The position numbers and the translations under genes are program-made. Of a stretch of 64,000 nucleotides of DNA, positions 6,366 through 58,717 are shown piece by piece. Within the stretch, counting starts at the first letter, position 1, and each line of letters begins with the position of its first letter. The notes below the pieces were generated by a model. The model was not told the origin of the DNA. It did no database searches and saw only the letters and a program-made list of their open reading frames with translations. The DNA lies in the IMG/VR virus record IMGVR_UViG_3300035145_003993, positions 124,001 through 188,000 of that record; one strand, 5' to 3'.

Positions 6366-6394
6366 ATTATACAATAAAATTTTTTAATTTACAC
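6366..6394 (-). promoter_or_regulatory. Phage promoter GTGTAAA-N16-TATAAT
   Basis: Exact consensus, upstream of the MoxR gene. Confidence 0.75.
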
Positions 6395-6402
6395 ATTTAA
6401 AA

Positions 6403-6738
6403 TTAAAATCTATATTGAACTGCGATTATTAATAGACTTAAAAAGATACATGTCAATGTTTTAAATGTAAATGGTGATTCACCTAAAAAGATGTATGACA
6501 ATACTGGATATACTAAATACGATAATCCAAAAAAAACAAATTTTGCAGACCAAACTGATCCTTGGTTTGAATTAACAAAATAAGTCCAAGAATAGAAATA
6601 AAGATAAGAAATAGGAATACTTAAAGTAACAATAAGAAAATGCATTTTATCTTTAAAAGCACTATTTATAAATTGAAGATTATGCTGAAAGAAAACAAGA
6701 GATGACCCAATAATATAAGCTAATAAAGCTTTTACCAT
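6403..6738 (-). CDS. Small 4-TM membrane protein, EamA/DMT-like
   Basis: Four hydrophobic segments; C-terminal LSYIFLGESPFTFKTLTCIFL. Confidence 0.65.
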   Translation of the reverse strand: MVKALLAYIIGSSLVFFQHNLQFINSAFKDKMHFLIVTLSIPISYLYFYSWTYFVNSNQGSVWSAKFVFFGLSYLVYPVLSYIFLGESPFTFKTLTCIFLSLLIIAVQYRF

Positions 6739-6740
6739 AA

Positions 6741-7490
6741 TTATTTAACACCCACTCTTGCGACTTCATTAAATCCTTCTTTTTTAAGATCAAGAAAGAA
6801 AGTCCAACCTGCTCCACCGAATCTATTTTTAATTGTTTCTAATACTCTTAAGCCTTTAAAATCTTCATCTTTTCTTTCAATAGAAAGATGTAACATTGCA
6901 TCAACCATATGTTTAAGTTTTTGAGATCCTGCCATGTTCCCGCTCTTATTAACTTGACCAATACAAATAATATTAACATAATGCTCTTTTGCATAGTCTG
7001 TTAAGATTTGTAAAGACCTTACAGCCGATTGTCCGTTAGTATGCTGTTCTCCGTATTTTCCATCATTTAAAGTTTGTAGCGAGTCAACTATTAAAAAGAA
7101 TGGTTTATTAGGAAATTTATTTCTTAAAGTATCACAATGTTTAATTAATCTAGGAACATAAGATTCTTGACCAGCAATAAATCCACTATTTAAATCAAGT
7201 CTTTCACAAGTCATTTTCACTTGATATAAACTTTCTTCTGCAGTATTAAATAAACATGTATAACCTTTTGATGTTAAAGCATTTGCAAGTGTTAACATCA
7301 AAGTTGTTTTACCTGCTCCTGGTTCACCAGTAAACAATGTCATTGTTGAAGGAGTAAAACCTTCTCCACCAAATGCTGCATCAATATAATCAATTCCACA
7401 AGGATGTCTTTCTCTCAATTTTGAGGGGATTGCAATATCTAGAATGTTTGTACCAAAAGTAATATTGTCTCTTTTGACATTAAGTTTCAT
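6741..7490 (-). CDS. radA: RadA/Sms-like RecA-family ATPase (core domain only)
   Basis: GEPGAGKT, IVDSLQ, GQVNKSG, LKHMVDAML and KNRFG motifs; no Zn finger or Lon domain. Confidence 0.8.
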   Translation of the reverse strand: MKLNVKRDNITFGTNILDIAIPSKLRERHPCGIDYIDAAFGGEGFTPSTMTLFTGEPGAGKTTLMLTLANALTSKGYTCLFNTAEESLYQVKMTCERLDLNSGFIAGQESYVPRLIKHCDTLRNKFPNKPFFLIVDSLQTLNDGKYGEQHTNGQSAVRSLQILTDYAKEHYVNIICIGQVNKSGNMAGSQKLKHMVDAMLHLSIERKDEDFKGLRVLETIKNRFGGAGWTFFLDLKKEGFNEVARVGVK

Positions 7491-7533
7491 TTTTTTATTC
7501 CTTATTGTTAGGATAAAGGTTTTGTATATTAAT

Positions 7534-7562
7534 ATTATAAATTAAATTAATTTATTTTGCAC
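7534..7562 (-). promoter_or_regulatory. Phage promoter variant GTGCAAA-N16-TATAAT
   Basis: One mismatch to the consensus. Confidence 0.65.
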
Positions 7563-7578
7563 TTTAAAAATCTTAAAT

Positions 7579-7899
7579 TCAAAATCTTCTTAAGAATTTA
7601 CCATCAATTTGTTTTACAGAATTTCCGATTAAGATAAAAAAACTATTTTTTTCTACTCTTTTAGAGAAATATTCAAAATTAGAAATGATTAAACCAATCT
7701 CGTTATTAGTTGTAACATTAACTAGTTCATTAACTTCAAAGTTCCATCTAATTACAGATGTTTTTTGTTTGAAGTTTTCTTTTTTAATTGTAGATTTAAT
7801 TACTTTAGGACTCTTTTTTCTAATGTTGTTAAGAGAATTTGAGTCTTTAGAAAGCATTTTCTTTTTAAGATCTCTAAGTTGATTTTTTGTTAATGACAT
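7579..7899 (-). CDS. Hypothetical protein, basic N-terminus plus SH3/KOW-like domain
   Basis: FEVNELVNVTTNNEIGLII. Confidence 0.6.
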   Translation of the reverse strand: MSLTKNQLRDLKKKMLSKDSNSLNNIRKKSPKVIKSTIKKENFKQKTSVIRWNFEVNELVNVTTNNEIGLIISNFEYFSKRVEKNSFFILIGNSVKQIDGKFLRRF

Positions 7900-7919
7900 T
7901 GTTTATTCTCCTTACATTA

Positions 7920-7948
7920 ATTATAACAATTTAATGTTGAATTTACAC
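7920..7948 (-). promoter_or_regulatory. Phage promoter GTGTAAA-N16-TATAAT
   Basis: Exact consensus. Confidence 0.75.
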
Positions 7949-8413: not shown

Positions 8414-8470
8414 GTTCCCTCCTGGGAGTATTATACAATAAAAAAAATTAAAATACATTTTAAATTTTTA

Positions 8471-8977
8471 TTATCTAATTGATTTTTTCTTAACAATCGA
8501 TGTTATTAATGATTTAAATTTATTTACATTTAAAACATAACCTGATTTGTAATTGTTGCTTTTTGAACATTTCTTTGAATTATTATAATAACATATAGCT
8601 TTATTCAAAGGCTTAAATTTATTAATATAATATTTTAAAGATTTTACACCATGATAATAAACGTCACATTTAGAAATCAATCCATCTCTTTTTGTCGCTG
8701 TAATTTTGTTCTCTTTATTTGGGCACCAAAACTCGTATTTTATTTGCATCGGTCCAATACATTTATATTTAGTTGGTTTTGACTGTTCAGTAAATCTAGA
8801 TTCTTCCCAAGCTACAGCTAAAGTAATTTCTACATTTAAATCATTTTTAATAGAAGATTCTATTAAAAGAGAACAAACAGTTAAGTTTTCTTCAGAAGGT
8901 TGTTTTCCTGTTAGTTTGTTGTAAATATCGTGACATAAATTATAATTTAAACTTGCTAATAGAATTAATTTAATCAA
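8471..8977 (-). CDS. Lytic transglycosylase (SLT-like)
   Basis: LAVAWEESRF catalytic Glu, GPMQI, AICYYN; N-terminal signal-like segment. Confidence 0.7.
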   Translation of the reverse strand: MIKLILLASLNYNLCHDIYNKLTGKQPSEENLTVCSLLIESSIKNDLNVEITLAVAWEESRFTEQSKPTKYKCIGPMQIKYEFWCPNKENKITATKRDGLISKCDVYYHGVKSLKYYINKFKPLNKAICYYNNSKKCSKSNNYKSGYVLNVNKFKSLITSIVKKKSIR

Positions 8978-9176
8978 AATATTTTTGTATATCTCCCTTA
9001 CGATATCTTACGGTTTCTGTTTTATTACCATCATTATATAAAACATCTATATAAACTCTTGCTTCAGAAGTTCCTCCGACTGTTAATTGGTTATTTCTTT
9101 CTGTTATGATATTAACAACAGTTCCGATCCTGTTCATAGTTTGAAAATAATAAACTTTATCACCTTTTTTTATCAT
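8970..9176 (-). CDS. Small SH3/KOW-like protein
   Basis: IKKGDKVYY...RIGTVVNI. Confidence 0.65.
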   Translation of the reverse strand: MIKKGDKVYYFQTMNRIGTVVNIITERNNQLTVGGTSEARVYIDVLYNDGNKTETVRYRKGDIQKYFD

Positions 9177-9202: not shown

Positions 9203-9231
9203 ATAATAATATAAAAAAAATTAATTTACAC
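9203..9231 (-). promoter_or_regulatory. Phage promoter GTGTAAA-N16-TATTAT
   Basis: Consensus -35 with near-consensus -10. Confidence 0.7.
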
Positions 9232-9814: not shown

Positions 9815-10990
9815 TCAGTATGAATATAAATATAACTTATCTTTGATCTTTTGTTGATTATCATGTGCTTGTTTTCTACTTAATCCTTTTTTAATACTTT
9901 CAGACATGATTCTTTGTGAATCTACAATATCTTCCATTAATTTACAATGACTTTCAGCATAATCTGTGATAAGATTAATATTTTTAATTACGTATTCTAA
10001 CCTTTTAATAGTAAAACATACAATATGAGCCGCATCTTTAAAAATAATTCTTTCTGAGGATGAGTGTGAAATATCTCTTTCAAGAAGTGTTGTACAGTTT
10101 TCAATTGCTGTTTGAAAATAAGATTTATATAACCTTGTAAGACCACAAATATTTTCTGTTAAGATAGGATTTTTTTTATGTGGCATTGCACTTGATCCTT
10201 TTTGCTTGGCTCTAAAAGGTTCAGCCATTTCATTTATTCCATCTAAACTGTAAATTCTTATATCATAAGAGATTTTTTCAATTGCAAGTACGAGCTGTAG
10301 TATGCCGTAAAAATAATCTAAGTAATGTTGTCTTGGAATAATTTGTGATGAAATAACAGGTTTAAGATCAAGTTGTTCTAAAGCTTTATGTTCACATTCA
10401 ACTGTATTAAAATAGTAATTCCCGGTAGCACCACTAAGTTTTCCTAAGCTTATTTTATCTTTAGATTCAAGTACTGAGTCATATCCTTTTCTCAAAAGAT
10501 GCAGCCAACGATATATTATATCATAATAAGTTTGTATTTCTGCAGCTTTTCCATGTGTTCTAGCAAGTATTCTGTTTTTCGATTCATCAGATTGTAACAG
10601 ATTTGACAAATGAAATATTAAACTACTTGCATAATCTAACACCACTTGTAGACTTTCTTTACACATTATTGATAAAGATGTATCAAGTATATCTGAAGAC
10701 GTTAAACCGTAATGAATCCATCTACCACTCTTGTCTGGAATAGACTCTTCTAACATTTGGACAAATGCTTGGACGTCATGATTAGTTTCTTCTTCTATTT
10801 CTTTCCAACGATTAATATTGATTTTAGCATTTTCTTTAATTACGTTGAATTCATCAGATGTAATTGTTGGATGAGTTATATTGTCTAATTGAGATTCAAG
10901 ATGAGCTAATTCTACTTTTAGCCAAGTGTTTAATTTATTTTCTGTTTTCCAAATATCATAAATTTCTTGAACTTTATATCTTGGTATCAT
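9815..10990 (-). CDS. purB: Adenylosuccinate lyase
   Basis: HYGLTSSDI, RTHGKAA, and the GSSAMPHKKNPILTENICGL signature. Confidence 0.93.
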   Translation of the reverse strand: MIPRYKVQEIYDIWKTENKLNTWLKVELAHLESQLDNITHPTITSDEFNVIKENAKININRWKEIEEETNHDVQAFVQMLEESIPDKSGRWIHYGLTSSDILDTSLSIMCKESLQVVLDYASSLIFHLSNLLQSDESKNRILARTHGKAAEIQTYYDIIYRWLHLLRKGYDSVLESKDKISLGKLSGATGNYYFNTVECEHKALEQLDLKPVISSQIIPRQHYLDYFYGILQLVLAIEKISYDIRIYSLDGINEMAEPFRAKQKGSSAMPHKKNPILTENICGLTRLYKSYFQTAIENCTTLLERDISHSSSERIIFKDAAHIVCFTIKRLEYVIKNINLITDYAESHCKLMEDIVDSQRIMSESIKKGLSRKQAHDNQQKIKDKLYLYSY

Positions 10991-11187
10991 TTTTCCTCTT
11001 TCGTTATTTTTTCTAGAAAGTCTGTAGGGATTTGTACTATTTCTTTATTTAATAAGATTTTAGATAGCGTTTTGCTTTCTTGATAAGAAGAATTTTTTCC
11101 ATAAGATATAAAAATCCCAACATCACATCTACTGTTTGAAAACTTATTTGTATTAAGAACAAGATCACCTTTAGTTAAGATGCCCAA
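10987..11187 (-). CDS. Small SH3/KOW-like protein
   Basis: LTKGDLV...DVGIFISY; sits between purA and purB. Confidence 0.55.
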   Translation of the reverse strand: MGILTKGDLVLNTNKFSNSRCDVGIFISYGKNSSYQESKTLSKILLNKEIVQIPTDFLEKITKEEK

Positions 11188-12371
11188 ACTATTTCTCCTC
11201 TTTTAGGACCAGTTGTAAAAGATATACGTTTTACACCAGTGTGGATTTCTATTGTATTTAATAATTCTTTAAATCCAGGATCAGTTGTTTTAACGCTGTT
11301 AATTCTAGTCATCGAATAGTTTCTTCCGTGTAAGAAGAAAGCAGGTTTCTCTATATGTGTCATCACGTCTGTTTTAACAACACACAAATGATCTACTCCA
11401 TTTTGTATAATAGCTAATTTAACTTCGTCTAAATCTAACCAACCACACTGTCTAGGACGCCCAGTTGTCGCACCAAACTCTTGACCAACTTCAGCTAATA
11501 TCTTTTCTTGACCATCTGTAATGATACTAGGAAAATTACCGCTACCTACCTTAGTTTTGTAAGATTTAATTACTCCTATTACTTCATCGATTTGCTTATG
11601 ATTTAATCCTGTAGAGTTGATTGCTCCACCTACAGAAGGTGAAGATGATGTAACGTCTGGATAGTTATCTGAAAATATGTTAAGGCCACTTCCTTGTGCA
11701 CCTTCTAAAAGAATATTATAATCTTTTTTATAATATTCGTGAAGAACATTTTCGTCACTTAGTTGATACATTCGCAAGATTGAAACCATATTTTCATATT
11801 CAGAAATCCAAGAATTAAATAGATCAAAGTCAGGTTTTAAGTCTTCTAAACTTTCACCGTCTTGTGCTCTTCTTTCTTGTAAGTCATAAAACCTTGATTG
11901 AATTTTAATGAGAGACTGTTCAGGCATATTTACAAAATCTTTAACCAAAATAGAGTCCCGAGCGTAAAAATCAGAGTATGCAGGACCAATTCCTTTTGCA
12001 GTCGTGCCTAGTCTTTTCTGATATTTGAGTCGATCAATTATTTTATGAGTTGGCTCAATTATAGGACAATATCCCGAAACTGAAAGATTTGAACCAGGTT
12101 TTACATTTAAGTCTGTTACTTCTTTGCAAAAGTCTTCTACATCTATAACACATCCTCTTGAAATAATGTTAATAACTTCTTTTGTTAAAACACCTACAGG
12201 AAGAATGTGTGTAACAAACTTATTACCTTTTCTATCGTAAACTGTATGACCAGCATTCCCTCCTCCTTGAAACCTTACAACGACGTCAGCCCAAGTTTGA
12301 ACTAAATCATCAACTACTCTACCTTTACCTTCGTCTCCATGTTGAAGACCTAAAACTAATTTTACTGGCAT
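11175..12371 (-). CDS. purA: Adenylosuccinate synthetase (canonical PurA, not PurZ)
   Basis: QHGDEGKG, RFQGGGNAGHT, GTTAKGIGPAY, LEGAQG, EFGATTGRPRQCGWLD. Confidence 0.93.
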   Translation of the reverse strand: MPVKLVLGLQHGDEGKGRVVDDLVQTWADVVVRFQGGGNAGHTVYDRKGNKFVTHILPVGVLTKEVINIISRGCVIDVEDFCKEVTDLNVKPGSNLSVSGYCPIIEPTHKIIDRLKYQKRLGTTAKGIGPAYSDFYARDSILVKDFVNMPEQSLIKIQSRFYDLQERRAQDGESLEDLKPDFDLFNSWISEYENMVSILRMYQLSDENVLHEYYKKDYNILLEGAQGSGLNIFSDNYPDVTSSSPSVGGAINSTGLNHKQIDEVIGVIKSYKTKVGSGNFPSIITDGQEKILAEVGQEFGATTGRPRQCGWLDLDEVKLAIIQNGVDHLCVVKTDVMTHIEKPAFFLHGRNYSMTRINSVKTTDPGFKELLNTIEIHTGVKRISFTTGPKRGEIVWAS

Positions 12372-12374
12372 AAT

Positions 12375-13436
12375 TTACTTTCTATTAAAAATATGTGGAT
12401 TACCTTCGATATGTGATGAAGAGCTTTGAACTCTAAAAACTGCATTTTCTCTAAGGTCATTTAAATTTTGAGCTCCGCTGTAAGACATTCCACTTTTAAC
12501 GTTTGACATAATTTCATTTAAAACTTCTTTAACAGATCCTTTAAAAGGTACATAAGAAGAAACGCCTTCAACTGAATTATATGTTCCTTTCCAGTCTTTT
12601 TGCGCTGCTTTAGAAGCCATACCATTATACTTTTTTGTTTTTTCACCTTCTTCGTTAAGAATCACTTCACCAGGTGTTTCTTCAGTTCCACTAAGAATAG
12701 AACCTAACATGACGAAATCTGCACCAGCGGCTAATGATTTAACAATATCACCACTATTTTTAATACCACCATCAGCAATAATATAAGAAGTTTTTTGATC
12801 TAATTTTTGTAACTCTAATTTAGCTTTGTAGCAATCAAGAACAGCTTGAAATGTTGGTATTCCGTGACCTGTTTGGATTCTAGTAGTACAAATACTACCA
12901 CTTCCGACCGAAGATCTTATTGCGTGAGCTCCAGCTTGAGTTAATCTTTTATATGCATGACCTGTTGCAATATTACCAGCAATTACAAACAAATGATCAT
13001 ATTCACTTCTGATAAACTCGATAGCATTTTCCATAAGTACATGATCACCATGTGCAATATCAATACAGACAATATTTAAATCATTTTTTACTAATTCAGA
13101 TAATCTTTCTTTATAATCTCCTGATGCTCCTATCGCTGCTGATTTGTAAAGATTATTATTTACTTTTGATAAAAGATTTACTTGATGATCTATAGAATTA
13201 TACCGATGTATAATTCCTAATCCACCTTGATCTATCATAGCATTAGACATATCATATTCTGTTACTGTAGACATAGGCGAACTAATAATTGGTATATTAA
13301 ACACTAAATCTTTTTTATTTTTATTTGTTGATACTTTAACAGATGTATCTATATTTTTCCTTGTTTTAAGGTTAGAATATTGTGGTTCTAAAATTACATC
13401 ATCAAAACTTAAAACTTTTTTATTTATAACTTTCAT
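12375..13436 (-). CDS. IMPDH/GMP reductase family enzyme without CBS domains; GMP reductase favoured
   Basis: [37 protein letters not shown]; no Arg-Tyr flap dyad. Confidence 0.85.
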
Positions 13437-13458: not shown

Positions 13459-13487
13459 ACTATAATAAATAAAATTTCTATTTACAC
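13459..13487 (-). promoter_or_regulatory. Phage promoter GTGTAAA-N16-TATAGT
   Basis: Upstream of the purine operon. Confidence 0.7.
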
Positions 13488-13494: not shown

Positions 13495-14466
13495 TTACAT
13501 ATTAGTTAAAAAATCTTTTCTATATTTTAATAATGCTTTTTCTTTTGCTTTAGACTCTAACACTATATCAACTGTTTTCCCACAGCTGTTAAAAGGTTTA
13601 TAGTAATAGTTCGAATGTGCCGCTGCAGATCTTATTGATGGATCTTCAAATTCTTTTTTTCCGTTAGAATGATGACAAGTAGGTCTTATACTCTTTGGCC
13701 AAGAATCGTAAGCCATTTCGAAAGATTCTTGATAAGAAGCATCTTGAGGCCCTAATGAATAGTGATGAGAATCAAAAACGATTGGAACTTTTATTTTTTT
13801 ATAAATATTTTCATAAAGAAATTTTGCACTAAACATTGAAGGTCTATCATCATTTTCAACAGTTAGCCTTGATTGAACTGAAGGTGTGAGTTTTTTAAAA
13901 TTATTAATAAAGTTATTTGCAGCTAATTGTAAATCTCCACCACAAGAAGATCCTAAATGAATATTAATTTTCGACCAATGATTTTGATCTAAACCCATTA
14001 AATCGAATAACTCACCATGCATTTCTAAATCAACAATACAATTTTTTACTACATTTTCTTTTTCAGATGCTAAGCAATTAAATTGACCAGGATGAAAAGA
14101 AACTCTTTGATTAATAACTTTTGTATAATTACCTGCCATTTTAAGATAATGACAAATTTCTTCATAATCTGGTAAATCTTTAAGATTATATTCACTAGCC
14201 CATGGAGTTAAACAAGAAGAAATCCTAAAAACTTCAATATTATTTTTATAATTCCAATTAAAAATTGGAAGTAAGTCTTTAACATTTTGAAGAACAATTT
14301 TTGAAACGTATGGTAAACCTTTTTTTAAAAAGGTAGCTTTTCTCATTGTTCTAGAATTAAATATATCTTTTTCTCTTAATTCCATATTAAGACAAGCATA
14401 TCCAAACCTATTCATAATAAATGTTCCTTCGTTTAATAAAAATTTGAATTTTTTTATATTATACAA
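13495..14466 (-). CDS. uvsE: UV damage endonuclease
   Basis: RFGYAC, RVSFHPGQF, RLTVENDD, FDSHH, HSNYY, VLESKAKE; true start is probably the internal MNRFG. Confidence 0.9.
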   Translation of the reverse strand: MYNIKKFKFLLNEGTFIMNRFGYACLNMELREKDIFNSRTMRKATFLKKGLPYVSKIVLQNVKDLLPIFNWNYKNNIEVFRISSCLTPWASEYNLKDLPDYEEICHYLKMAGNYTKVINQRVSFHPGQFNCLASEKENVVKNCIVDLEMHGELFDLMGLDQNHWSKINIHLGSSCGGDLQLAANNFINNFKKLTPSVQSRLTVENDDRPSMFSAKFLYENIYKKIKVPIVFDSHHYSLGPQDASYQESFEMAYDSWPKSIRPTCHHSNGKKEFEDPSIRSAAAHSNYYYKPFNSCGKTVDIVLESKAKEKALLKYRKDFLTNM

Positions 14467-14487
14467 AAAAAAATTTATTATTTACAC
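14458..14487 (-). promoter_or_regulatory. Phage promoter GTGTAAA-N17-TATAAT
   Basis: Upstream of uvsE. Confidence 0.7.
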
Positions 14488-22017: not shown

Positions 22018-22246
22018 TTCTAATTTTTCTTTGACTTAACAAACACCAATTTAGAACTTGTTTAGATTGTTCATCTGTTAAACCATGCTCTTCAATTAAT
22101 TTTACTAAAGATAAATCCTGACAGAATTGTAATTCATCTTCTTCTATAAATTGACTTGATAATGATTTAGCAATTATTAAATTAATCGCGTCTATATTTT
22201 TGTTTCTTTTTGCCATAATAATTTGTTCTTTCTTGATTTTTCTCAT
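21986..22246 (-). CDS. Hypothetical protein
   Basis: ORF track; start may be internal (MAKRNK). Confidence 0.55.
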   Translation of the reverse strand: MRKIKKEQIIMAKRNKNIDAINLIIAKSLSSQFIEEDELQFCQDLSLVKLIEEHGLTDEQSKQVLNWCLLSQRKIRNEFRNTHENE

Positions 22247-22359
22247 ATTTATCTTGATTATAATTATTATAGCAATTATTACTTTTATTTATACTTTCTA
22301 CTTTTCTTTCCTTTTTAATAAAAAAAATATTCTTTACATAAAAGAAAAAATCAACCCAA

Positions 22360-22638: not shown

Positions 22639-22891
22639 TTTTTCTCTTCATTAATTCAATAACTGACTCCTGAAACTGGGGAGACTTAGCAATATTAAAT
22701 ATGTCTTCACTAGAGTGTTCCATTCCGTATTTTTTCGAAATGTTTGCTGCAATTTTAACAAAAGACCTATTAATTATATTTCTAACTGTTGAATGGTTCA
22801 TTTTATGACCACACTTTGTCATAATATTTGCAATATCGTATAAACCTAGACCTTCTTCATTTTTAACTGTTACATATTTTTTATTTTTCAA
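22616..22891 (-). CDS. HTH protein resembling detached sigma region 4.2
   Basis: [11 protein letters not shown]...[17 protein letters not shown]; TTG start overlaps the sigma stop by 11 nt. Confidence 0.65.
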
Positions 22892-23633
22892 GATATTTTC
22901 TCATTTCTTTAGTCACAGGAAAGTTTTTAATATTATTGTCGTTATTGTTAATTCCAAATCTAAGTCTAATTATTTTTTCTTCTTTAGGAGTTAATAAAGA
23001 TAAACTTTCTTCAACAATTTGATTTAGTTCTTTATGTTCTAAAGATTTTTCAGGATTCGAAAATATTGACTCATCTTCTATTTTATTTAAAACACTGAAT
23101 GTATTCGAATCACTATCTTCTCTTTCAATAGAAGAAATATTTTTATTTGACTTTAATGTGTATTTAACTTTTTTAGATGGTTCATCAACTAATTCAGATA
23201 TTTCTTCTATTGAAGGATTTCTTCCATTTTCTTCTTCAAATTTTAAAATTTCTTTTTTAATTTTAGAATTTAATAACCTTGAGTGAGTAGGAACTTTTAT
23301 ATTTGAAGATTTTTCATTTATATATTGTAATGCTGATTGTTTTATCCACCAGCAAGCGTATGTGCTAAATTTGTAACCTAACTCAGGATCAAATTTGTCA
23401 ACAGCTTTAAGAAGTCCTATTGTACTTTCTTGAATAAGATCATCAAAATCTAAACCATTTCTATGATATTTTTTTGCAATTGAAATAACTAATCGATAAT
23501 TTGACTCAATTAGCTTTTTTCTTGCTTTTTCATCACCTTTTTTAATTCTTCTTGATAATTCAATTTCCTCTTTTTTCTTTAATAAGGGATTTTCTTTAAT
23601 AACTTTAGAGAAACTAGAGTGAATATTAACCAT
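22881..23633 (-). CDS. Sigma-70 family factor (regions 1.2-4.1), lacking the region 4.2 HTH
   Basis: [55 protein letters not shown], then stop after 21 residues. Confidence 0.9.
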
Positions 23634-23672
23634 TAATTGTCCTTTAATTATATAGGTTTTTTGTTAATTATA

Positions 23673-23873
23673 CTATATATCAATTATAATTACACGCGAT
23701 TTTTCTTTTTCTTTTAATCTTTCATTAGGTACACGATCATAGTCGTATGGATTAGGAATTTCAATTCTTAACATTCTATCATTTTCATCATAGAAATTTT
23801 CTTTTTGTTTTTCATAAATAGATTTTTTAATTAAAAGGTCATCTATAATACTGATTTCAATTTTAGAATTCAT
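23673..23873 (-). CDS. Small hypothetical protein
   Basis: RMLRIEIP...SRVIIIDI. Confidence 0.55.
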   Translation of the reverse strand: MNSKIEISIIDDLLIKKSIYEKQKENFYDENDRMLRIEIPNPYDYDRVPNERLKEKEKSRVIIIDI

Positions 23874-26594: not shown

Positions 26595-27033
26595 TAATAA
26601 TACTAGTATTTAAAATATTTGTATTGTCAATAATATTTGCTGTTTGACCATTATCTAAATTAATCTTTATTTGATTATTTTTTATAATACTATTATTTGT
26701 CTCATTTTTACACTTTAAAGAATCTCTATTTAATTTTTCTTCCACTATATTAAAGAATTCTTCTTCGAGATTAATTGCACTTTCAATCATTTTACTAATA
26801 GAAGATTTTGCTCTTTCTAAAATAAATTCATTAACTTCATCTAAATCTTCAAAAGTATTATCTAACTTATCTATACTAATTTTTTTACCTTTTTTATTAG
26901 GTAATAAAACTTTATAATTAGTTACTTCACCTTCTAGATCTTTTATGACAATTTGCTCTACTATCTTTACAGGTATAATAGCTTGCTTGTCTTTTAAAAT
27001 AGTATATAAAATTTGCCCTACTTCATATGACAT
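26548..27033 (-). CDS. Hypothetical protein
   Basis: YEVGQILY beta-rich N-terminal domain. Confidence 0.65.
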   Translation of the reverse strand: MSYEVGQILYTILKDKQAIIPVKIVEQIVIKDLEGEVTNYKVLLPNKKGKKISIDKLDNTFEDLDEVNEFILERAKSSISKMIESAINLEEEFFNIVEEKLNRDSLKCKNETNNSIIKNNQIKINLDNGQTANIIDNTNILNTSIINGKEKEEINNESTTS

Positions 27034-43112: not shown

Positions 43113-43141
43113 ATTGTATTAACTAATATGTATATTTACAT
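43113..43141 (-). promoter_or_regulatory. Phage promoter variant ATGTAAA-N16-TACAAT
   Basis: Upstream of the kinase operon. Confidence 0.55.
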
Positions 43142-43155: not shown

Positions 43156-43365
43156 ATGTACCAAATTTTAGAAAATTATATACAACTTGTATTTGAAAAC
43201 GAAAAAAATAAAAACAAAACGTTTAAAGATATACTTAATAGTTTAAAAAATAGTCAAAATCCTAAAAAGGTACTAAGAAATACAGATCCTATAGAAAGAA
43301 ATACAGATCAAATAGGATTTGACCAATTAATTAAAAAATCTAGTAATTCTAATCAAACGCGTTAA
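43156..43365 (+). CDS. Short leader-bearing ORF, possible remnant
   Basis: MYQILENYIQLVFENE; RBS present; overlaps the dnaE stop. Confidence 0.45.
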   Translation: MYQILENYIQLVFENEKNKNKTFKDILNSLKNSQNPKKVLRNTDPIERNTDQIGFDQLIKKSSNSNQTR

Positions 43366-46444: not shown

Positions 46445-46463
46445 AATTATTCCTTTTTATTAG

Positions 46464-46492
46464 AATATAATACAATTAGTTAATATTTACAC
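46464..46492 (-). promoter_or_regulatory. Phage promoter GTGTAAA-N16-TATATT for the dnaE C-fragment
   Basis: -35 lies in the last codons of the endonuclease gene. Confidence 0.65.
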
Positions 46493-47426: not shown

Positions 47427-47463
47427 TATATTATCCTCCTAGGCACATATTATATATTCTGCT

Positions 47464-48381
47464 TCAGAGGTTAATATTAATAATTATATCACCTTTAACA
47501 ATATCTTTTGTATCAATCCATCCTTTGTCTTTAACAAGAACACGATGATCAGGTGTAAGTTTGATTTCGTTACCTTCTTTGTCTTTAATTCTCATAAGCT
47601 TAGCACCTCCTCGGGTTTTGTCACCCCAGATTACTTTTTTAAATTCAGCTTTGCTAGTATATTCATTATAAGAAAGAACTTGGATTTCTTCACCTTTATT
47701 AAATCTTTCTACAACTTCTTTAATAGATAGATTTCCAGATGAAGTTTGTAAAGTTGTGTCAGGATGAAGACAAGCTGTAGATATGTGTAATCCTTCACCA
47801 TGTTCTTGAAGCATTTGAAAATCAATACGTGGGTATCTATAAAAACCATATTTATACGATTTTTTAACTAAAGTAAATAAATTGTGAAGACCTTTTTGGT
47901 TTTTTGCTGTAACTACCAAATGATATCTTCTTTTCCACTCATCTTTAAGGATATCAACATTTTTTGTTTCATCTTCGTCTTCAACAACTAATCCGCCACT
48001 TTCATCATCTGCGTCAATATCAACTTTTTCTTTTGATTTCCTTTCAGCAGCAGCGGCAGATTTTGCGTCTTTTACTGCTTGTTTGTGAGCAGCATATTCT
48101 TCAGACCATTGTTGAAGTGAAGGAACAAAATAAAATTCAACTCCATAAATTTGTCTATAATTCCTTCCTGATTTTTGCATTCTAATTGTATGAGATCTTG
48201 CATGAGCAAGACCATTACCGTTACCATGGTCTGTTAGTGCCCATGCATCCATACCCTGAGATTCAGACAAAACAAAATCAATATGATCAGATGGGTATCC
48301 TAATCCATCGAATGTTGAAAACGTGCTGTGTGCATGAAGACCGACAAATCTATCTGGTGGTGTTATTAAATCAATAGACAA
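47464..48381 (-). CDS. dnaE: DNA polymerase III alpha, N-terminal PHP domain plus N-intein
   Basis: LHAHSTFSTFDG, ALTDHG, IYGVEFY, YHLVV, ISTA|CLHPDT. Confidence 0.95.
   Translation of the reverse strand: MSIDLITPPDRFVGLHAHSTFSTFDGLGYPSDHIDFVLSESQGMDAWALTDHGNGNGLAHARSHTIRMQKSGRNYRQIYGVEFYFVPSLQQWSEEYAAHKQAVKDAKSAAAAERKSKEKVDIDADDESGGLVVEDEDETKNVDILKDEWKRRYHLVVTAKNQKGLHNLFTLVKKSYKYGFYRYPRIDFQMLQEHGEGLHISTACLHPDTTLQTSSGNLSIKEVVERFNKGEEIQVLSYNEYTSKAEFKKVIWGDKTRGGAKLMRIKDKEGNEIKLTPDHRVLVKDKGWIDTKDIVKGDIIININL
47467..47772 (-). mobile_element. Split intein N-fragment (102 aa) of DnaE
   Basis: Block A CLHPDT, block B LTPDHRVL, GW...GD. Confidence 0.93.
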
Positions 48382-48409: not shown

Positions 48410-48658
48410 TTATTTTTCTGATTTTAAAATGTTAATAACTTTTATATCACGAGTTTTAATATCATATATTTTATTACTATTTACATCAAGCATTTTATAA
48501 CTAAAAAATCTTTTATTTCCGTATTTTGTTTTATTTTCAAATAAAAAATTTCTATCTAAAACCAAAGCTGTTCTCGGACCTGAAAATTGATTTCTAAATA
48601 TTTTATGTTCAAATGTTACAAGATCAGAAACTTCTAATCCTTTTGAATAAGAAGACAT
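48410..48658 (-). CDS. Small SH3/KOW-like protein
   Basis: LEVSDLVTF...TALVLD. Confidence 0.6.
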   Translation of the reverse strand: MSSYSKGLEVSDLVTFEHKIFRNQFSGPRTALVLDRNFLFENKTKYGNKRFFSYKMLDVNSNKIYDIKTRDIKVINILKSEK

Positions 48659-48705: not shown

Positions 48706-48734
48706 ATTATATTTATTAAATAATTAATTTACAC
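48706..48734 (-). promoter_or_regulatory. Phage promoter GTGTAAA-N16-TATAAT
   Basis: Exact consensus, upstream of the dnaE-N operon. Confidence 0.75.
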
Positions 48735-48758: not shown

Positions 48759-48857
48759 ATGAAAACTAAAGAAATATTAAGAGAATGGAATTTATTTTTA
48801 AAAAATATATTGAGACTCTTATTTCTTAAATATTGTATTATACTAATCGTTCAATAA
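48759..48857 (+). pseudogene. Leader-only stub (32 aa)
   Basis: MKTKEILREWNLFLKN..., runs into the photolyase 3' end. Confidence 0.3.
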
Positions 48858-50021
48858 TTTTAAAGTTCTTTCTTGATTAAATCTCATAACTTTTCCATAT
48901 TGTAATTTAAAACTTTCAACACAGTTTACAATATTATTTGGACTTTGAGCATCTTCACAGTGTGTATTAAAAAAATCAATTAAAGTTTCTAATGATTTTA
49001 AACCTCCACCAAGATTCCAATAACATTCTCCTGCGAACCACATTCTAGATCTATTAGGCATCCACCTATTTTTAATACACTGTTTTATTTCTTTGTTAAG
49101 GTAATCATTTTTTGTATTTCCATTCATAATATCTTTTTTTGATAAAACGGGAGTAAAAGTATTATTTAATAAATTGTTATAAGACTTTTCATCTAAAAGT
49201 TTTTTTGAAATACTATCTACACTATCTAAAAAACTTATTTCTTTAATTCTACATTTTCTAATACAAATTTCTCTAAATGCTAATTGTCTAAGAATAGGTA
49301 TAATTGGATTATCCTTTTCAATAAACCTTGGAGAAAGTGATAAAACTAAATGTGTTATTACCCTTGGATCAATTAAACCATGATGTAAAAATTTAGAAAG
49401 TTTTGTACTTCCTTCTCTTTCATTTCTTGTTTTATGATAAGATAAAACCTTTTCTTTGAATCTTTTTAAAATGTTACAAACATTTTTATGAGTTTTCAAA
49501 GATAAATTATGATTAATTTTATATAATTCGCCTATACTCCCAAAATCATTTATTTTATTATAATTACAAAATATTTCTTCTTTCTTTAGTCTATTTTTTG
49601 TCCAATAGATCCATCTACTTTTTGCTGTCATTTTTGTACAAGACTCAATATAAGAGTCAGAATCGACTTCTTCTACATTAATATTATTAAATTTTAATTT
49701 TTCTGAAAAAAGAGGTTTATCGTAATATACTTTTTCGATATTTTCATTTTTACAAAAATCTTCAATTAATGCAACAGGATTTTTTGATTTAATTATTTTA
49801 AGATTTAAATCATAATTTTCTTTTAATCTGCTTGAAAAATAATTTAATGATTCGTAATAAAATAGATTATTATTATTTTTATAATAATTTTTATTATTAT
49901 CATTTAAATAATAATTTGAAATATATACAACACAAATATTTTTATAAGAAGATATAGCTTTTTTAAAAATAAAACTGTTTGTTCTAAAAGAATGATCAAT
50001 TATAATTAGACATTTAGACAT
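48843..50021 (-). CDS. Divergent photolyase/cryptochrome-like protein, shortened C-terminus
   Basis: STKLSKFLHHGLI, LRQLAFREI, WMPNRSRM, EDAQSPNN. Confidence 0.75.
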   Translation of the reverse strand: MSKCLIIIDHSFRTNSFIFKKAISSYKNICVVYISNYYLNDNNKNYYKNNNNLFYYESLNYFSSRLKENYDLNLKIIKSKNPVALIEDFCKNENIEKVYYDKPLFSEKLKFNNINVEEVDSDSYIESCTKMTAKSRWIYWTKNRLKKEEIFCNYNKINDFGSIGELYKINHNLSLKTHKNVCNILKRFKEKVLSYHKTRNEREGSTKLSKFLHHGLIDPRVITHLVLSLSPRFIEKDNPIIPILRQLAFREICIRKCRIKEISFLDSVDSISKKLLDEKSYNNLLNNTFTPVLSKKDIMNGNTKNDYLNKEIKQCIKNRWMPNRSRMWFAGECYWNLGGGLKSLETLIDFFNTHCEDAQSPNNIVNCVESFKLQYGKVMRFNQERTLKLLND

Positions 50022-50055: not shown

Positions 50056-50084
50056 AATATAATCATTATTATTCTTATTTACAC
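50056..50084 (-). promoter_or_regulatory. Phage promoter GTGTAAA-N16-TATATT
   Basis: Downstream member of a tandem pair. Confidence 0.65.
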
Positions 50085-50089
50085 ATAAA

Positions 50090-50118
50090 ACTATAATTAA
50101 TTAATATTTAATTTACAC
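50090..50118 (-). promoter_or_regulatory. Phage promoter GTGTAAA-N16-TATAGT
   Basis: Upstream member of a tandem pair. Confidence 0.65.
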
Positions 50119-54425: not shown

Positions 54426-55391
54426 TTAATTGTTGAATTGTTTTTTAACTTGATTTATGGCTCTTACATCATCATTCCACATCCTTGTAAAGATTTTTTC
54501 TTCACCAGATTTATTGCCGTTTAATTCTTCGCGGCGACAAGGGTAAATTGAATCTTCTTCATTGAATTCAAACAAATCGTTTTTAGGCTCTGGATGATAT
54601 AAATTAGTTCCTTTTGAAGTAAAAGTACCATCTGCTTGTTTAACTCTAAATGTTCTAACATAATGCATGTCAGGTTTTTCAAAATCTAAGCAAGTTGCAA
54701 CTTCAGGAATTCTTTCAACAACTAGTCTTGCTATTTTAGTAGCAATAATATTATCAACCTCAGGCTGAATTTGTACATCTTGTCTTTGTTTAATAAGACC
54801 AATTAAATCTTTTAAATTAAACCTTGCAATATAAAATGTTTCGATAGATTTTGGCATAATAACTCTAGCGTCCATTAAAGAAATTAGTTTTGAATCTACC
54901 ATATCAGAATATAATTGTTTTGCAGCAGCAGCAACTTCAATAAATCTATGGTAAAAATCAGAATTTTCAATAGACTCTGGAACTAAAATATTATCGTGTC
55001 GTAGGTCTCTATCACCTGTGCATTGAGCAGCAAATGATCCTGCTCTGTGTCTAATTAAGTGTGTTACGGTTTGAGTATCAATACCACTTATCCTAAAAGT
55101 AAATCCTAAACATTCCATAGGCGTTGGTAAGGCTCTAAAATTTAGTACGTCTTGAAGGTTTTGTGAGGCCTCTTCAGGTGAAGCATTATTAAAGTCAGTT
55201 TCAAAAGGTCGATCAGCCCATGTTGCCTTGGTCATATTCCAAGCTATTTCTTGTGCTTGCTTTTGTGTTGGAGCATCAATCACTTCAATTTTAAGTGATT
55301 CTAAATTGTTAATATAGTTTGTAACAGGAACTTCGTTAAACTTTAAAAGCATAGGAAGTTGAATCTTATCTAAATCATTATTAATTGGCAA
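54426..55391 (-). CDS. Divergent ThyX-like flavoprotein
   Basis: RHRAGSFAAQC (Cys at the RHRx7S position), DARVIMP, NLKDL...QR. Confidence 0.8.
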   Translation of the reverse strand: MPINNDLDKIQLPMLLKFNEVPVTNYINNLESLKIEVIDAPTQKQAQEIAWNMTKATWADRPFETDFNNASPEEASQNLQDVLNFRALPTPMECLGFTFRISGIDTQTVTHLIRHRAGSFAAQCTGDRDLRHDNILVPESIENSDFYHRFIEVAAAAKQLYSDMVDSKLISLMDARVIMPKSIETFYIARFNLKDLIGLIKQRQDVQIQPEVDNIIATKIARLVVERIPEVATCLDFEKPDMHYVRTFRVKQADGTFTSKGTNLYHPEPKNDLFEFNEEDSIYPCRREELNGNKSGEEKIFTRMWNDDVRAINQVKKQFNN

Positions 55392-55418: not shown

Positions 55419-55447
55419 ATTATAAAATTAAAAATTTTATTTTACAC
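55419..55447 (-). promoter_or_regulatory. Phage promoter GTGTAAA-N16-TATAAT
   Basis: Exact consensus, upstream of the ThyX-like gene. Confidence 0.75.
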
Positions 55448-56504: not shown

Positions 56505-56506
56505 AT

Positions 56507-56737
56507 TTATTGTACTTTTTCTTCTTGAGTTTCGCTTAACTTTTCTTGTGAATTAGATAACATTTTATTAATTTGTTCGTTAAAAATTTCTTGATATTGT
56601 TCGTTAACTGTAAGTTTGTTTTCTTCATTAATTTCTAATGATACCATCCTGAGATGGTCAACAATGTCTGTTCCAGTTAAGATTGCCATTTGAATTAGTT
56701 TAGCAATATGTGCTATTGTAGTATCATGTAATAACAA
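56507..56737 (-). CDS. Hypothetical protein
   Basis: ORF track. Confidence 0.6.
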   Translation of the reverse strand: MLLHDTTIAHIAKLIQMAILTGTDIVDHLRMVSLEINEENKLTVNEQYQEIFNEQINKMLSNSQEKLSETQEEKVQ

Positions 56738-56747
56738 AATTTTCTCC

Positions 56748-57110
56748 TTAAATTACTACTGGTGATTTGCTTAATTTTTGTGTTATAATATCTGAATCGT
56801 GATCTAATGCTTTAAGCATAGAAATACCTTCTATCGTTTTAATTGATTTTAAAACTGTTATGAATTTATCTTTTCCTTCAACAAATTTTTCAATATATGA
56901 AACGTTTAATTCAATTATTCTATGACCATTTGAAGATACAATATCTGAAACTGGTCTTGTTTGTCTGACTGTTACGATTCCTGGTAAGGCCCTCATGTCA
57001 GTCATAATATCAAGAACTGTAGGGTCTTCTCTATCTTCTATTTTAATTCTACATCTAATTAAAGTATTAATTAAGTCTTCATGTCTTTCAACGAGTAATT
57101 TTTTCTTCAT
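56748..57110 (-). CDS. Hypothetical protein
   Basis: ORF track, GGAG RBS. Confidence 0.65.
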   Translation of the reverse strand: MKKKLLVERHEDLINTLIRCRIKIEDREDPTVLDIMTDMRALPGIVTVRQTRPVSDIVSSNGHRIIELNVSYIEKFVEGKDKFITVLKSIKTIEGISMLKALDHDSDIITQKLSKSPVVI

Positions 57111-57145
57111 TAATAATCTCCTTTATAATGTAGTAATTATTTCTT

Positions 57146-57868
57146 TTACTCGTGATTATTAATATAACTGTTAACAGTTTCTGGCCAAAGATCTTTAATA
57201 ATATCTAACATTCTAAATGCTAATTGTTGAATTTCCCATTGAGCTCCTTCATGTGTTCTTAAATTTATAAACTTTAATATGTTATTTAAATTCGCAGAAG
57301 CGTAATATTCTGTATAAAGATTTTGTGGTAAAATTCCACGCGCTTGTTCTCTGCATATACCATTGTTTACTAAATCATCAAATAATTTTAAAGAATTTTT
57401 GTGATAATTTTTAATAACATTCGATGCTTTAGTTTTAATTTTAACGCTACTTACTGCAGAGTCAATTTCTAATATAGGATCAATTAATTCATCTTGATTT
57501 GAAGATTGTCTATTTGATTTGTGTTGAGTTCTAAATTGATTAGGTTCATAAAATTCTATATTAGAATCTGTATATCTTCTAGAGATTTCGTTGTATGACC
57601 AAGTTCTGTGTCTATGATGTTGTGATCGAACAAATAATGGAACTTTAATTCTAAAAGTTGCAAAATTATGTTCTAAAGTAGATGTATGTTTATGTTTAAT
57701 TAAATAATTAATTAACTTTTTATCTTTATTATCAAGACTTTCTTTGTGAACTCCGAATGATACCCTTGCTGAATTTACTATTGTAATATCTTCGCCAACA
57801 TATTGAACTAATTCTATTTTTCCTATGCCATCTTCATACAGATTTTTTTCAATAGTATCTATTTTCAA
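57146..57868 (-). CDS. thyX: Flavin-dependent thymidylate synthase
   Basis: NSARVS, HTSTLEH, RHRTWSYNEISRRY, EQARGILP. Confidence 0.95.
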   Translation of the reverse strand: MKIDTIEKNLYEDGIGKIELVQYVGEDITIVNSARVSFGVHKESLDNKDKKLINYLIKHKHTSTLEHNFATFRIKVPLFVRSQHHRHRTWSYNEISRRYTDSNIEFYEPNQFRTQHKSNRQSSNQDELIDPILEIDSAVSSVKIKTKASNVIKNYHKNSLKLFDDLVNNGICREQARGILPQNLYTEYYASANLNNILKFINLRTHEGAQWEIQQLAFRMLDIIKDLWPETVNSYINNHE

Positions 57869-57873
57869 ATTTA

Positions 57874-58638
57874 TTATCCTTCACTTTTTTGATTATTTAA
57901 TGGCTTTTCAAAGTGATAAAAAGCTCCTCCTGTGTGACCGTCGTGAATTAGAGTTGCAAAACACCTTGCAACAGGACCACCTAATTTATCCTTAAGTTTT
58001 TTATAAAAAGGATGATTTTTAATTTCTTTTGGAATTCTCCACGAAGAAGATGTAGAATATCCTGTATCATATTTAATAAAGTCAAACCCTGTATCTGTAC
58101 CTAGCTTAATAAAATTTTCATGAACTGGAAAGTTAACATGTCCAATTTTATGTTCCTTTTCAGGTGAATGAAATTGTGTGTCTTGTGTATTCATTGGGAA
58201 TCCTAGTACCATTCTCCCACCAGGTCGAAGAACTCTATAAAGCTCTTTCATAATATATGGATAATTGTGGTCTTCAATATGTTCAAAAACTTCTGACGAA
58301 ACCATGATATCAAACATTTCGTCACTATATGGGAGTCCTGTTGTGATATCATGTTGCTTTAATTGAAATTTGTTACTTTGCTTAGACCAAGCCATATCGA
58401 TATATTTTTGTTGATAGTCAATACCATAATACTCAGTAAAAACAAAAAGACTTTTCATAAATGTCCAGAGTCTACCATTATAACATCCAATATCAAGAAG
58501 TTTTGGCTGATTTTTTCCATCATATCCATTTGAAGAGCACCACTTACGAACAGCTTCAACTAAATAATTTTGAGAAAAAACAATAAATTGACAATCAATT
58601 AAAGTTTGTGGGTGAGACTTTTTTTGTATCGCAGCCAT
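57874..58638 (-). CDS. Class I SAM-dependent methyltransferase
   Basis: LLDIGCYNG, FDIMVSSEVFEH, RVLRPGG. Confidence 0.88.
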   Translation of the reverse strand: MAAIQKKSHPQTLIDCQFIVFSQNYLVEAVRKWCSSNGYDGKNQPKLLDIGCYNGRLWTFMKSLFVFTEYYGIDYQQKYIDMAWSKQSNKFQLKQHDITTGLPYSDEMFDIMVSSEVFEHIEDHNYPYIMKELYRVLRPGGRMVLGFPMNTQDTQFHSPEKEHKIGHVNFPVHENFIKLGTDTGFDFIKYDTGYSTSSSWRIPKEIKNHPFYKKLKDKLGGPVARCFATLIHDGHTGGAFYHFEKPLNNQKSEG

Positions 58639-58688
58639 ATGGTTACATACCTTTCTTATTTTTTATAATTTTATTAATTTGTTTTATT

Positions 58689-58717
58689 ATTATATTAATA
58701 TTAGTTTTATTTTACAC
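58689..58717 (-). promoter_or_regulatory. Phage promoter GTGTAAA-N16-TATAAT
   Basis: Exact consensus, upstream of the methyltransferase-thyX operon. Confidence 0.75.

What the first reader, a model, noticed from the sequence alone, without database searches (positions are those of the whole stretch)
6366..58717. Recurrent phage promoter GTGTAAA-N16-TATAAT with a non-canonical -35
Seen: 13 copies, all on the coding strand upstream of replication, repair, metabolism or small orphan genes. Starts are 6366, 7534, 7920, 9203, 13459, 14458, 43113, 46464, 48706, 50056, 50090, 55419 and 58689; 12 of 13 have a 16-nt spacer. The -10 is sigma70-like but the -35 is not TTGACA. Inference: it defines an early/middle regulon, possibly read by the phage's own sigma system.
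Basis: partly seen in the sequence, partly recalled or inferred. Interest (0 to 1): 0.6.

Follow-up and report, generated by a model that had tools for sequence, protein, structure and literature searches.

The report
Phage promoter family with GTGTAA box
The repeated GTGTAA-17 bp-TATAAT sites are real promoters of the early and replication genes of an uncultured 211-kb marine-type phage, are shared by its relatives, and may be read by an unusual two-piece phage sigma factor, although that last point is unproven.

Summary
With at most one mismatch, GTGTAAA-N16-TATAAT occurs 14 times in the window against 0.59 expected. Thirteen of these lie on the minus, coding strand, 17-90 nt before start codons.

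The window is part of a 211-kb phage contig. A position-weight scan finds 47 sites genome-wide against about 1 in shuffles. Thirty-three stronger copies lie outside the window before small early-type ORFs. Fourteen lie before replication, repair and nucleotide genes and the phage sigma gene. None lies in the virion block. GTGTAA is the only hexamer enriched 17 bp upstream of TATAAT, and TTGACA never occurs there.

Relatives with 27-54% GC keep a (G/T)TG(T/C)A box, often at orthologous positions with diverged spacers.

The clade's sigma factor stops after region 4.1. A separate 87-aa zinc-type protein carries a sigma-4.2 helix-turn-helix with an invariant, altered recognition helix. An outgroup phage with an intact sigma has no such motif.

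"Early/middle regulon" is supported. "Read by the phage's own sigma system" is plausible (about 0.5), but the sigma gene itself sits behind such a promoter. No start site could be mapped and the host is unknown.

The parts
6366..6394 (-). Promoter GTGTAAA-N16-TATAAT, 46 nt before the AAA-ATPase gene (5238-6320)
   Evidence: Exact match; PWM score 22.5. Orthologous sites lie before the same gene in G001, G005 and G006, with the boxes kept and the spacers diverged. Gene identity: phrog_1297.
7534..7562 (-). Promoter variant GTGCAAA-N16-TATAAT before the RecA/DnaB-like ATPase gene (6741-7490)
   Evidence: (score 16.5). Orthologous sites in G001, G005 and G006. Gene.
7920..7948 (-). Promoter before a 106-aa ORF (7579-7899)
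   Evidence: Exact match; score 20.3.
8430..8458 (-). Weak variant ATGTAT-N17-TATAAT before a 156/171-aa ORF; candidate
   Evidence: Score 13.2. The G001 orthologue has a strong GTGTAA site, score 23.1, at the same distance.
9203..9231 (-). Promoter with -10 TATTAT before a 68-aa ORF (8970-9176)
   Evidence: (score 19.8).
13459..13487 (-). Promoter with -10 TATAGT before the IMPDH/GMP-reductase-like gene (12375-13436)
   Evidence: Gene: PF00478.
14458..14487 (-). Promoter with a spacer one base longer, before the UvdE UV-endonuclease gene (13495-14466)
   Evidence: (score 19.7). Gene: PF03851.
22266..22294 (-). Candidate GTATAAA-N16-TATAAT, 20 nt before an 86-aa ORF (21986-22246)
   Evidence: One-mismatch match. 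Not examined further.
23667..23695 (-).
   Evidence: Score 20.8. A GTGTAA(C)-type site precedes the sigma gene in relatives of 33-40% GC. The -35 box overlaps the conserved end of the upstream ORF.
22881..23633 (-). Phage sigma factor, 250 aa: regions 1.2, 2, 3 and 4.1, with no region 4.2 helix-turn-helix
   Evidence: Pfam hits PF00140, PF04542 and PF04539, with no PF04545. The alignment to SigA ends at RLRFG. The same truncation is seen in 21 of 24 homologues checked.
26684..26713 (-).
   Evidence: Score 17.4. Orthologous sites in G001 and G006. Gene.
43113..43141 (-). Weak variant ATGTAAA-N16-TACAAT before a P-loop/thymidylate-kinase-like gene (42202-43092)
   Evidence: The position is kept in G001 as TTGTAA-N17-TATAAT. 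Gene: weak Pfam hits.
46464..46492 (-). Promoter with -10 TATATT, 20 nt before the C-terminal piece of dnaE (43349-46444)
   Evidence: (score 18.7). Gene.
48706..48734 (-). Promoter before an 82-aa ORF (48410-48658)
   Evidence: Exact match; score 21.8.
50056..50118 (-). Two tandem promoters (50056-50084 and 50090-50118) before a 392-aa ORF (48843-50021)
   Evidence: (scores 19.3 and 12.8). One orthologous site in G001.
55419..55447 (-). Promoter before the ThyX-type thymidylate synthase gene (54426-55391)
   Evidence: Exact match. G001 keeps both boxes and the leader, but the spacer differs. Gene: PF02511.
58689..58717 (-). Promoter before a methyltransferase gene (57874-58638)
   Evidence: Exact match. 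Orthologous site in G001. Gene.

Best explanation
The sites are genuine promoters of one family, consensus aaGTGTAA-N17-TATAAT. They drive the pre-replicative genes of a 211-kb phage that has no RNA polymerase of its own and therefore uses the host core enzyme.

Two sub-classes share the same two boxes. About 33 copies outside the window (genome 88.7-121.4 kb) add a conserved CATAAGG at about +1 and precede small early-type ORFs. The 14 or more copies in and just beyond the window lack that box and precede replication, repair and nucleotide genes and the phage sigma gene.

The -10 is read by region 2 of a sigma-70-family factor. The -35-like GTGTAA box sits exactly where sigma region 4.2 would bind. 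I infer that it is read by a phage-encoded sigma-4.2-type helix-turn-helix: the 87-aa zinc-type protein at genome 72782-73045. This protein would work with the phage's region-4.2-less sigma as a two-piece sigma.

The host primary sigma can probably start these promoters at a lower level, because T-34, G-33 and A-30 are kept, the -10 is perfect and the spacer is 17 bp. That would solve the start-up problem and give a positive loop that draws polymerase to phage DNA.

Shown: the motif, its statistics, its positions, its conservation, and the domain content of the two proteins. Inferred: who binds the box, and the order of events.
For: Motif statistics:
- 47 sites score at least 14, against about 1 in Markov shuffles. 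46 of 47 are co-oriented with local genes, and the median distance from -10 to start codon is 49 nt.
- GTGTAA is the only hexamer enriched 17 bp upstream of the 714 TATAAT in the genome (28 against 0.26 expected). TTGACA occurs 0 times.
- Canonical sigma-70 matches are not enriched: 72 found against 69.6 in shuffles.

Distribution:
- No site lies in the 1-88 kb block, which holds major head, portal and terminase.

Conservation:
- Boxes are kept and spacers diverged before the same genes in G001, G005 and G006.
- Related boxes are enriched in every relative analysed that has the truncated sigma, from 27 to 54% GC: G001 GTGTA[AT], G005 GTGCAA, G006 GTG[TC]AA, G007 GTGTA[GA], G004 CTGTAAAA, G009 TGTAAA.
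- The -10 differs in G007 (TAAATT) and G006 (TATACT).
- G008, an outgroup with an intact 401-aa sigma, shows no enriched box.

Proteins:
- The sigma lacks region 4.2 in 21 of 24 homologues checked.
- The 87-aa protein has PF04545 and aligns to Taq and E. coli sigma region 4.2, with TRERIRQIE replaced by an invariant TRMRVCQIE.
- It is present in G001, G003, G004, G005 and G007, always divergent from phoH. It forms a family of 82 clusters, all 77-97 aa.
- No gp55, AsiA, MotA or phage RNA polymerase was found.
Against:
- The strongest copies precede early-looking genes, which in known phages are read by the unmodified host holoenzyme.
- Relatives were found through the sigma gene, so the co-occurrence of sigma and motif is partly by construction.
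- Only one outgroup was analysed.
- The recognition helix of the 87-aa protein is invariant while the box varies at -35 and -32, so there is no covariation.
- In G004 the TGTAA core sits 2 bp further upstream.
- The complex prediction could not be run.
- The zinc-type N-terminal part has only a modest model (pLDDT 74) and no structural match.
- No start site could be read.
Confidence: 0.5

Rival explanations
1. The host primary sigma alone reads all these promoters, as with T4 early promoters. GTGTAA is then a clade-specific or host-specific version of the -35 box. The region-4.2-less phage sigma serves only late promoters that lack a -35 box, much as T4 gp55 does. The 87-aa protein has another role, for example shutting off host or early transcription.
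For: - The box sits at the exact -35 position with the optimal 17-bp spacer and keeps T-34, G-33 and A-30. The -10 is the sigma-70 consensus with T-12 invariant.
- Early and middle sub-classes share both boxes, which argues for one holoenzyme that is present from time zero.
- The sigma gene is itself behind such a promoter.
- No gp55-type late sigma was found, so the phage sigma is free to be the late factor.
- Virion genes lack the box.
- T4 early promoters are read by the unmodified host sigma-70 polymerase, yet their alignments show additional regions of consensus of their own (PMC2988021).
Against: - G-35, T-32 and A-31 are mismatches to TTGACA yet nearly invariant in 41 sites, and TTGACA is never used.
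- The same box recurs in phages of 27-54% GC, whose hosts probably differ.
- It is paired with the variant -10 boxes TAAATT and TATACT in G007 and G006.
- No late motif could be defined that would show what the phage sigma reads.
- The host is unknown, so its own promoters could not be checked.
Confidence: 0.33
2. GTGTAA is the site of a separate activator or repressor, a sigma-appropriation-like or class II activator arrangement. That factor would work on host sigma-70 polymerase, and the phage sigma would play no part at these sites.
For: - A 450-bp non-coding stretch at genome 88,250-88,700 carries six GTGTAA boxes in both orientations without any -10, as expected for a free-standing protein-binding site.
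- T4 middle promoters show the precedent: a phage box plus a host -10 (PMC2988021).
Against: - No AsiA or MotA homologue was found.
- The spacing is that of a -35 box (17 bp), not the 12 bp of a MotA box.
- The only conserved candidate DNA binder identified is itself a sigma-4.2 homologue.
Confidence: 0.12
3. The sites are not promoters. They are remnants of a spreading repeat, or a chance pattern in AT-rich DNA.
For: - Several early-class copies share 60 nt or more of near-identical sequence, which looks like duplication.
- The genome is 27% GC, so TATAAT alone is common: 714 copies.
Against: - The enrichment is far above shuffles.
- The sites show strict strand and position rules.
- In the window and between orthologous sites the spacers differ while the boxes are kept.
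Confidence: 0.03

Closest known systems
T4 early promoters (host sigma-70, with added phage-specific consensus)
   Same: Many strong copies lie before small early genes. The -10 is a perfect TATAAT and the layout is -35/-10. The phage has no polymerase of its own. The major head protein here is gp23-like (PMC2988021).
   Different: According to PMC2988021, T4 early promoters are excellent matches to the host -35, TGn and -10 elements. Here the -35 box matches TTGACA in only 3 of 6 positions, TGn is not general, and a CATAAGG box sits at about +1.
T4 middle promoters and sigma appropriation (MotA box plus host -10, AsiA/MotA)
   Same: A phage-specific upstream box is joined to a sigma-70-type -10, before replication and nucleotide-metabolism genes (PMC2988021).
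   Different: The MotA box is centred at -30, 12 bp from the -10. Here the box lies at -35 with a 17-bp spacer. No AsiA or MotA homologue is present.
Two-subunit sigma SigO-RsoA of Bacillus subtilis
   Same: The sigma-2 and sigma-4 functions lie on two separate polypeptides that together direct initiation (PMC8103513).
   Different: Here the large piece carries regions 1.2 to 4.1 of a primary-type sigma. The small piece is only the 4.2 helix-turn-helix behind a four-cysteine module. Partnership between them is not shown.
Phage sigma cascades (SPO1 gp28 and gp33/34; T4 gp55)
   Same: A phage-encoded sigma-family protein redirects the host core enzyme to phage-specific promoters (own knowledge; gp55 annotation).
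   Different: Those factors read -10 and -35 boxes unlike the host's. Here the -10 is the host consensus and only the -35 differs. No gp55 homologue is present.

Membership tests
Bacterial sigma-70-type (-35/-10) promoter | -10 hexamer TATAAT-like, with A at -11 and T at -7 | tested here: met
   T, A and T are invariant at -12, -11 and -7 in 41 sites. TATAAT is exact in 28.
Bacterial sigma-70-type (-35/-10) promoter | -35 hexamer close to TTGACA | tested here: not met
   GTGTAA matches in 3 of 6 positions. TTGACA occurs 0 times 14-20 bp upstream of any TATAAT. The canonical scan shows no enrichment.
Bacterial sigma-70-type (-35/-10) promoter | Spacer of 17 +/- 1 bp between the hexamers | tested here: met
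   The spacer is 17 bp in 24 of the GTGTAA...TAnnnT pairs, against about 2 expected. There are few at 16 or 18.
Bacterial sigma-70-type (-35/-10) promoter | Transcription starts 5-9 nt downstream of the -10 | tested here: inconclusive
   Only assembled contigs of metatranscriptome runs were available. They break at the repeated promoters, as do DNA contigs. Two adapter-joined ends lie 20 and 23 nt after -10 boxes.
T4-type middle promoter (sigma appropriation) | Upstream box centred near -30, 12 +/- 1 bp from the -10 | tested here: not met
   The box lies 17 bp from the -10.
T4-type middle promoter (sigma appropriation) | AsiA and MotA encoded by the phage | tested here: not met
   PF09010 and PF09158 give no match in the 211-kb contig, which is 84% complete.
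Two-subunit sigma factor | Sigma-2 and sigma-4 DNA-reading parts on separate proteins | tested here: met
   The 250-aa protein has regions 1.2, 2 and 3 and ends after 4.1. The 87-aa protein has only PF04545, matching region 4.2.
Two-subunit sigma factor | The two proteins bind each other and together direct initiation | not testable with these tools
There is no biochemical data. Co-occurrence in G001, G003, G004, G005 and G007 is the only support.

The most novel reading that the evidence does not exclude
A widespread clade of uncultured marine and aquatic large phages uses a split primary-type sigma factor. One piece is a sigma truncated after region 4.1. The other is a free-standing zinc-bound region-4.2 module with a changed recognition helix (TRMRVCQIEK). 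Together they read a private -35 box, (G/T)TG(T/C)A, next to a host-like -10. This would let the phage own nearly all of its pre-replicative promoters while sharing the host core enzyme.
Probability: 0.35. Interest if true: 0.75.

Novelty: new variant of a known kind. Interest (0 to 1): 0.6.

Why it matters
If the box is read by a phage-made region-4.2 module, this is a new way of retargeting bacterial RNA polymerase. It would lie between sigma replacement (SPO1, T4 gp55) and sigma appropriation (T4 AsiA/MotA). It would also give a natural, orthogonal -35 reader-and-box pair for synthetic circuits.

Even on the plain reading, the motif provides a ready annotation key for a large group of uncultured phages: at least 44 IMG/VR contigs and 82 protein clusters of the small protein. 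It separates pre-replicative from virion genes without any culture.

Tried and rejected
- **Near-identical phage records:** none in the phage collection.
- **Host identity:** A scan of bacterial genomes with the sigma found only bacterial RpoD-type genes at 30-40% identity and no binned phage contigs. The head protein points only to distant T4-like phages of varied hosts. Strong Shine-Dalgarno use (59% of genes against 6% at random) argues against a Bacteroidota host but names none.
- **Start-site mapping:** three metatranscriptome runs hold a 90-95% relative of the early region. They are kept only as contigs that break at the repeated promoters, as the DNA run does.
- **Late promoter:** k-mer enrichment (TATAAATA 7 against 0.7 expected), lists of TATA-type octamers and G000/G001 footprints gave no clean motif. 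A TAATGCC lead fell apart.
- **Covariation:** none was found between the -35 or -10 variants and residues of the small protein or of sigma region 2.4.
- **First fold** of the small protein from 6 sequences was poor, pLDDT 59.
- **Literature:** a search for the motif found nothing. The 'moraphage' paper describes another lineage without sigma or polymerase data of use here.
- **Rfam:** only three tRNAs outside the window.


Full report
**1. The observation**

The 13 sites are present at the stated coordinates. All lie on the minus strand, which carries almost all genes of this window.
- Six sites match GTGTAAA-N15-18-TATAAT exactly, against 0.04 expected.
- With the spacer fixed at 16 and one mismatch allowed there are 14 matches against 0.59 expected. 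Thirteen are on the minus strand.
Site 14458 has a spacer one base longer. Site 43113 has two mismatches, but its position is kept in a relative.

**2. The wider picture**

The window is bases 124,001-188,000 of a single 211,364-bp virus contig with 27.4% GC. CheckV estimates it to be 84% complete.

A two-block weight matrix with a 16-18 bp spacer finds 47 sites scoring at least 14. Markov shuffles of the genome give about one.
- 46 of 47 sites point the same way as the local genes.
- The median distance from the -10 to the start codon is 49 nt.
- 33 sites lie at 88.7-121.4 kb on the plus strand, before ORFs of mostly 50-250 aa.
- 14 sites lie at 130-197 kb on the minus strand.
- None lies in the first 88 kb, which holds the major head, portal and large terminase genes.

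In an unbiased test I counted every hexamer lying 17 bp upstream of the 714 TATAAT in the genome. Only GTGTAA stands out, with 28 against 0.26 expected. TTGACA occurs 0 times at any spacer from 14 to 20. The standard sigma-70 scan finds no excess over shuffles, 72 against 69.6.

**3. Two sub-classes**

Both classes share aaGTGTAA-N17-TATAAT.
- The early-type class usually has C or T after GTGTAA and a conserved a(t/a)a(t/c)CATAAGG directly after the -10. This places CATAAGG at about the start site.
- The window class has GTGTAAA(A/T) and no such box.

Genes behind the window sites are:
- an AAA ATPase and a RecA/DnaB-like ATPase;
- UvdE and an IMPDH/GMP-reductase-like protein;
- the sigma factor and a 5'-3' exonuclease;
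- the C-terminal piece of DnaE;
- ThyX and a methyltransferase;
- several small ORFs.

This supports an early/middle (pre-replicative) regulon. The timing itself is inferred from gene content.

**4. Conservation**

The sigma gene retrieved 44 related IMG/VR loci.

In the close relative G001 (239.5 kb) the same architecture recurs: GTGTA[AT]-N17-TATAAT in 34 copies, with CCATAAGG in its early block. Promoters lie before the same genes in G001, G005 and G006. The two boxes are kept while the spacer sequences differ, as expected for sites under selection.

More distant relatives have their own versions:

| Genome | -35-like box | -10 box |
|---|---|---|
| G005 | GTGCAA | TATAAT |
| G006 | GTG[TC]AA | TATACT or TATAAT |
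| G007 | GTGTA[GA] | TAAATT or TACATT |
| G007, second set | TTGTAA | TATAAT |
| G004 | tcTGTAAAA | TGG-TATAAT, followed by ATAAGG |
| G009 (54% GC) | TGTAAA | TAnnnT |

G008 is a 427-kb outgroup whose sigma is intact. It shows no enriched box.

**5. Candidate readers**

- The phage has no recognisable RNA polymerase, gp55, AsiA or MotA.
- Its one sigma (window 22881-23633) has regions 1.2, 2 and 3. It aligns to primary sigmas up to RLRFG in region 4.1 and then ends in a short tail.
- 21 of 24 homologues checked end the same way, often with an NFP(I/V)T tail motif. The three most distant ones have a normal region 4.2.
- A separate 87-aa protein (genome 72782-73045) carries only Sigma70_r4. Its residues 50-82 align to region 4.2 of Taq SigA and E. 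coli sigma-70, but the recognition helix reads TRMRVCQIEK instead of TRERIRQIEAK.
- This protein occurs in G001, G003, G004, G005 and G007, always divergent from phoH.
- It forms a family of 82 clusters, all 77-97 aa. Four cysteines and the whole recognition helix are invariant.
- A model built from 49 sequences (pLDDT 74) matches solved sigma region 4 structures only over the helix-turn-helix.

**6. Weighing the readings**

For a phage-encoded reader of the box:
- Three positions that disagree with TTGACA are nearly invariant.
- The canonical box is never used.
- The box is a trait of a clade spanning 27-54% GC.
- It pairs with non-host -10 variants in two relatives.
- The clade has exactly the protein one would need.

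Against it:
- The sigma gene is itself behind such a promoter.
- The strongest copies precede early-type genes.
- Both sub-classes share the same boxes. This most simply means a single holoenzyme that is present from the start of infection.
- The association of sigma with motif is partly by construction.
- No covariation was found.

A mixed model reconciles these points: host sigma starts the promoters, and the phage pair then takes them over. It is inference. I put the phage-reader model at about 0.5, host sigma alone at about 0.33, a separate activator at about 0.12, and 'not promoters' at about 0.03.

**7. What could not be done**

- Public RNA data for this clade were available only as contigs, which break at the repeated promoters. 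No start site could be read, and transcription itself is not shown. I kept to the 6,000-letter limit for that call.
- The host remains unknown.
- No late promoter motif could be defined.
- Only table 11 was used.

**8. Comparison and novelty**

A phage-specific promoter consensus and phage sigma factors are both well known (T4, SPO1; PMC2988021). So is a sigma split into two proteins (SigO-RsoA; PMC8103513).

Three things are new here:
- the box itself;
- its use for nearly all pre-replicative promoters of a large uncultured clade;
- its association with a primary-type sigma cut after region 4.1 plus a free-standing zinc-type region-4.2 protein.

I rate this a new variant of a known kind.

Noticed in passing
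window 43349-48381 (-): dnaE is in pieces. 47464-48381 has a PHP domain plus the N part of an intein. 46476-47426 is a 316-aa ORF with no Pfam hit. 43349-46444 starts with the C part of an intein and continues as Pol III alpha. This may be a split intein or an intein interrupted by a free-standing ORF. A promoter site sits in the 31-nt gap before the last piece.
   Followed up: partly
window 9815-13436 (-): A run of purine-nucleotide genes: a lyase (fumarate/adenylosuccinate lyase family), an adenylosuccinate-synthetase-like protein and an IMPDH/GMP-reductase-like protein. I did not test whether the synthetase is a PurZ-type enzyme for 2-aminoadenine DNA.
   Followed up: no
genome 88,250-88,700 (L051:8250-8700), outside the window: A CA-rich non-coding stretch between the leftward genes and the early block. 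It carries six GTGTAA boxes in both orientations without a -10, and a GC-rich palindrome. A similar stretch lies at the same place in G001, 205.5-206.25 kb. It could be a binding array, an origin or a terminus.
   Followed up: partly
genome 88.7-121.4 kb (L051, L052); also G001, G004, G005: A conserved CATAAGG (ATAAGG) box 5-6 nt after the -10 of the early-class promoters. In this genome and in G001 it is followed by CA-rich leaders such as TCCAATnAATCAAnCAACC. It is kept in relatives with only 40% sigma identity but is absent from G006, G007 and G009. Its function is unknown.
   Followed up: partly
window 23897-25528 (-): A GroEL-type chaperonin gene (PF00118) lies next to the sigma gene.
   Followed up: no
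G007 (IMGVR_UViG_3300020473_000010), several sites: This relative has two promoter sets in the same gene region: GTGTA[GA]-N17-TAAATT/TACATT with a conserved aaaacc upstream, and TTGTAA-N17-TATAAT. This hints at two holoenzymes there.
   Followed up: partly
genome 72715-72781, between phoH and the 87-aa gene: The gene for the small sigma-4.2-like protein is always divergent from phoH. It has its own conserved upstream stretch, TAAAATCTTTCTTT...TATAAT, with a deviant -35 region.
   Followed up: partly
genome 113,444-115,905 (L052:13444-15905): Three tRNA genes lie in the early/plus-strand block. There are none in the window.
   Followed up: no
window 27412-35774 (-) and 20263-22017 (-): Large ORFs of 807, 1044 and 584 aa have no Pfam or PHROG match. 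They lie in a stretch of the window without GTGTAA promoters.
   Followed up: no
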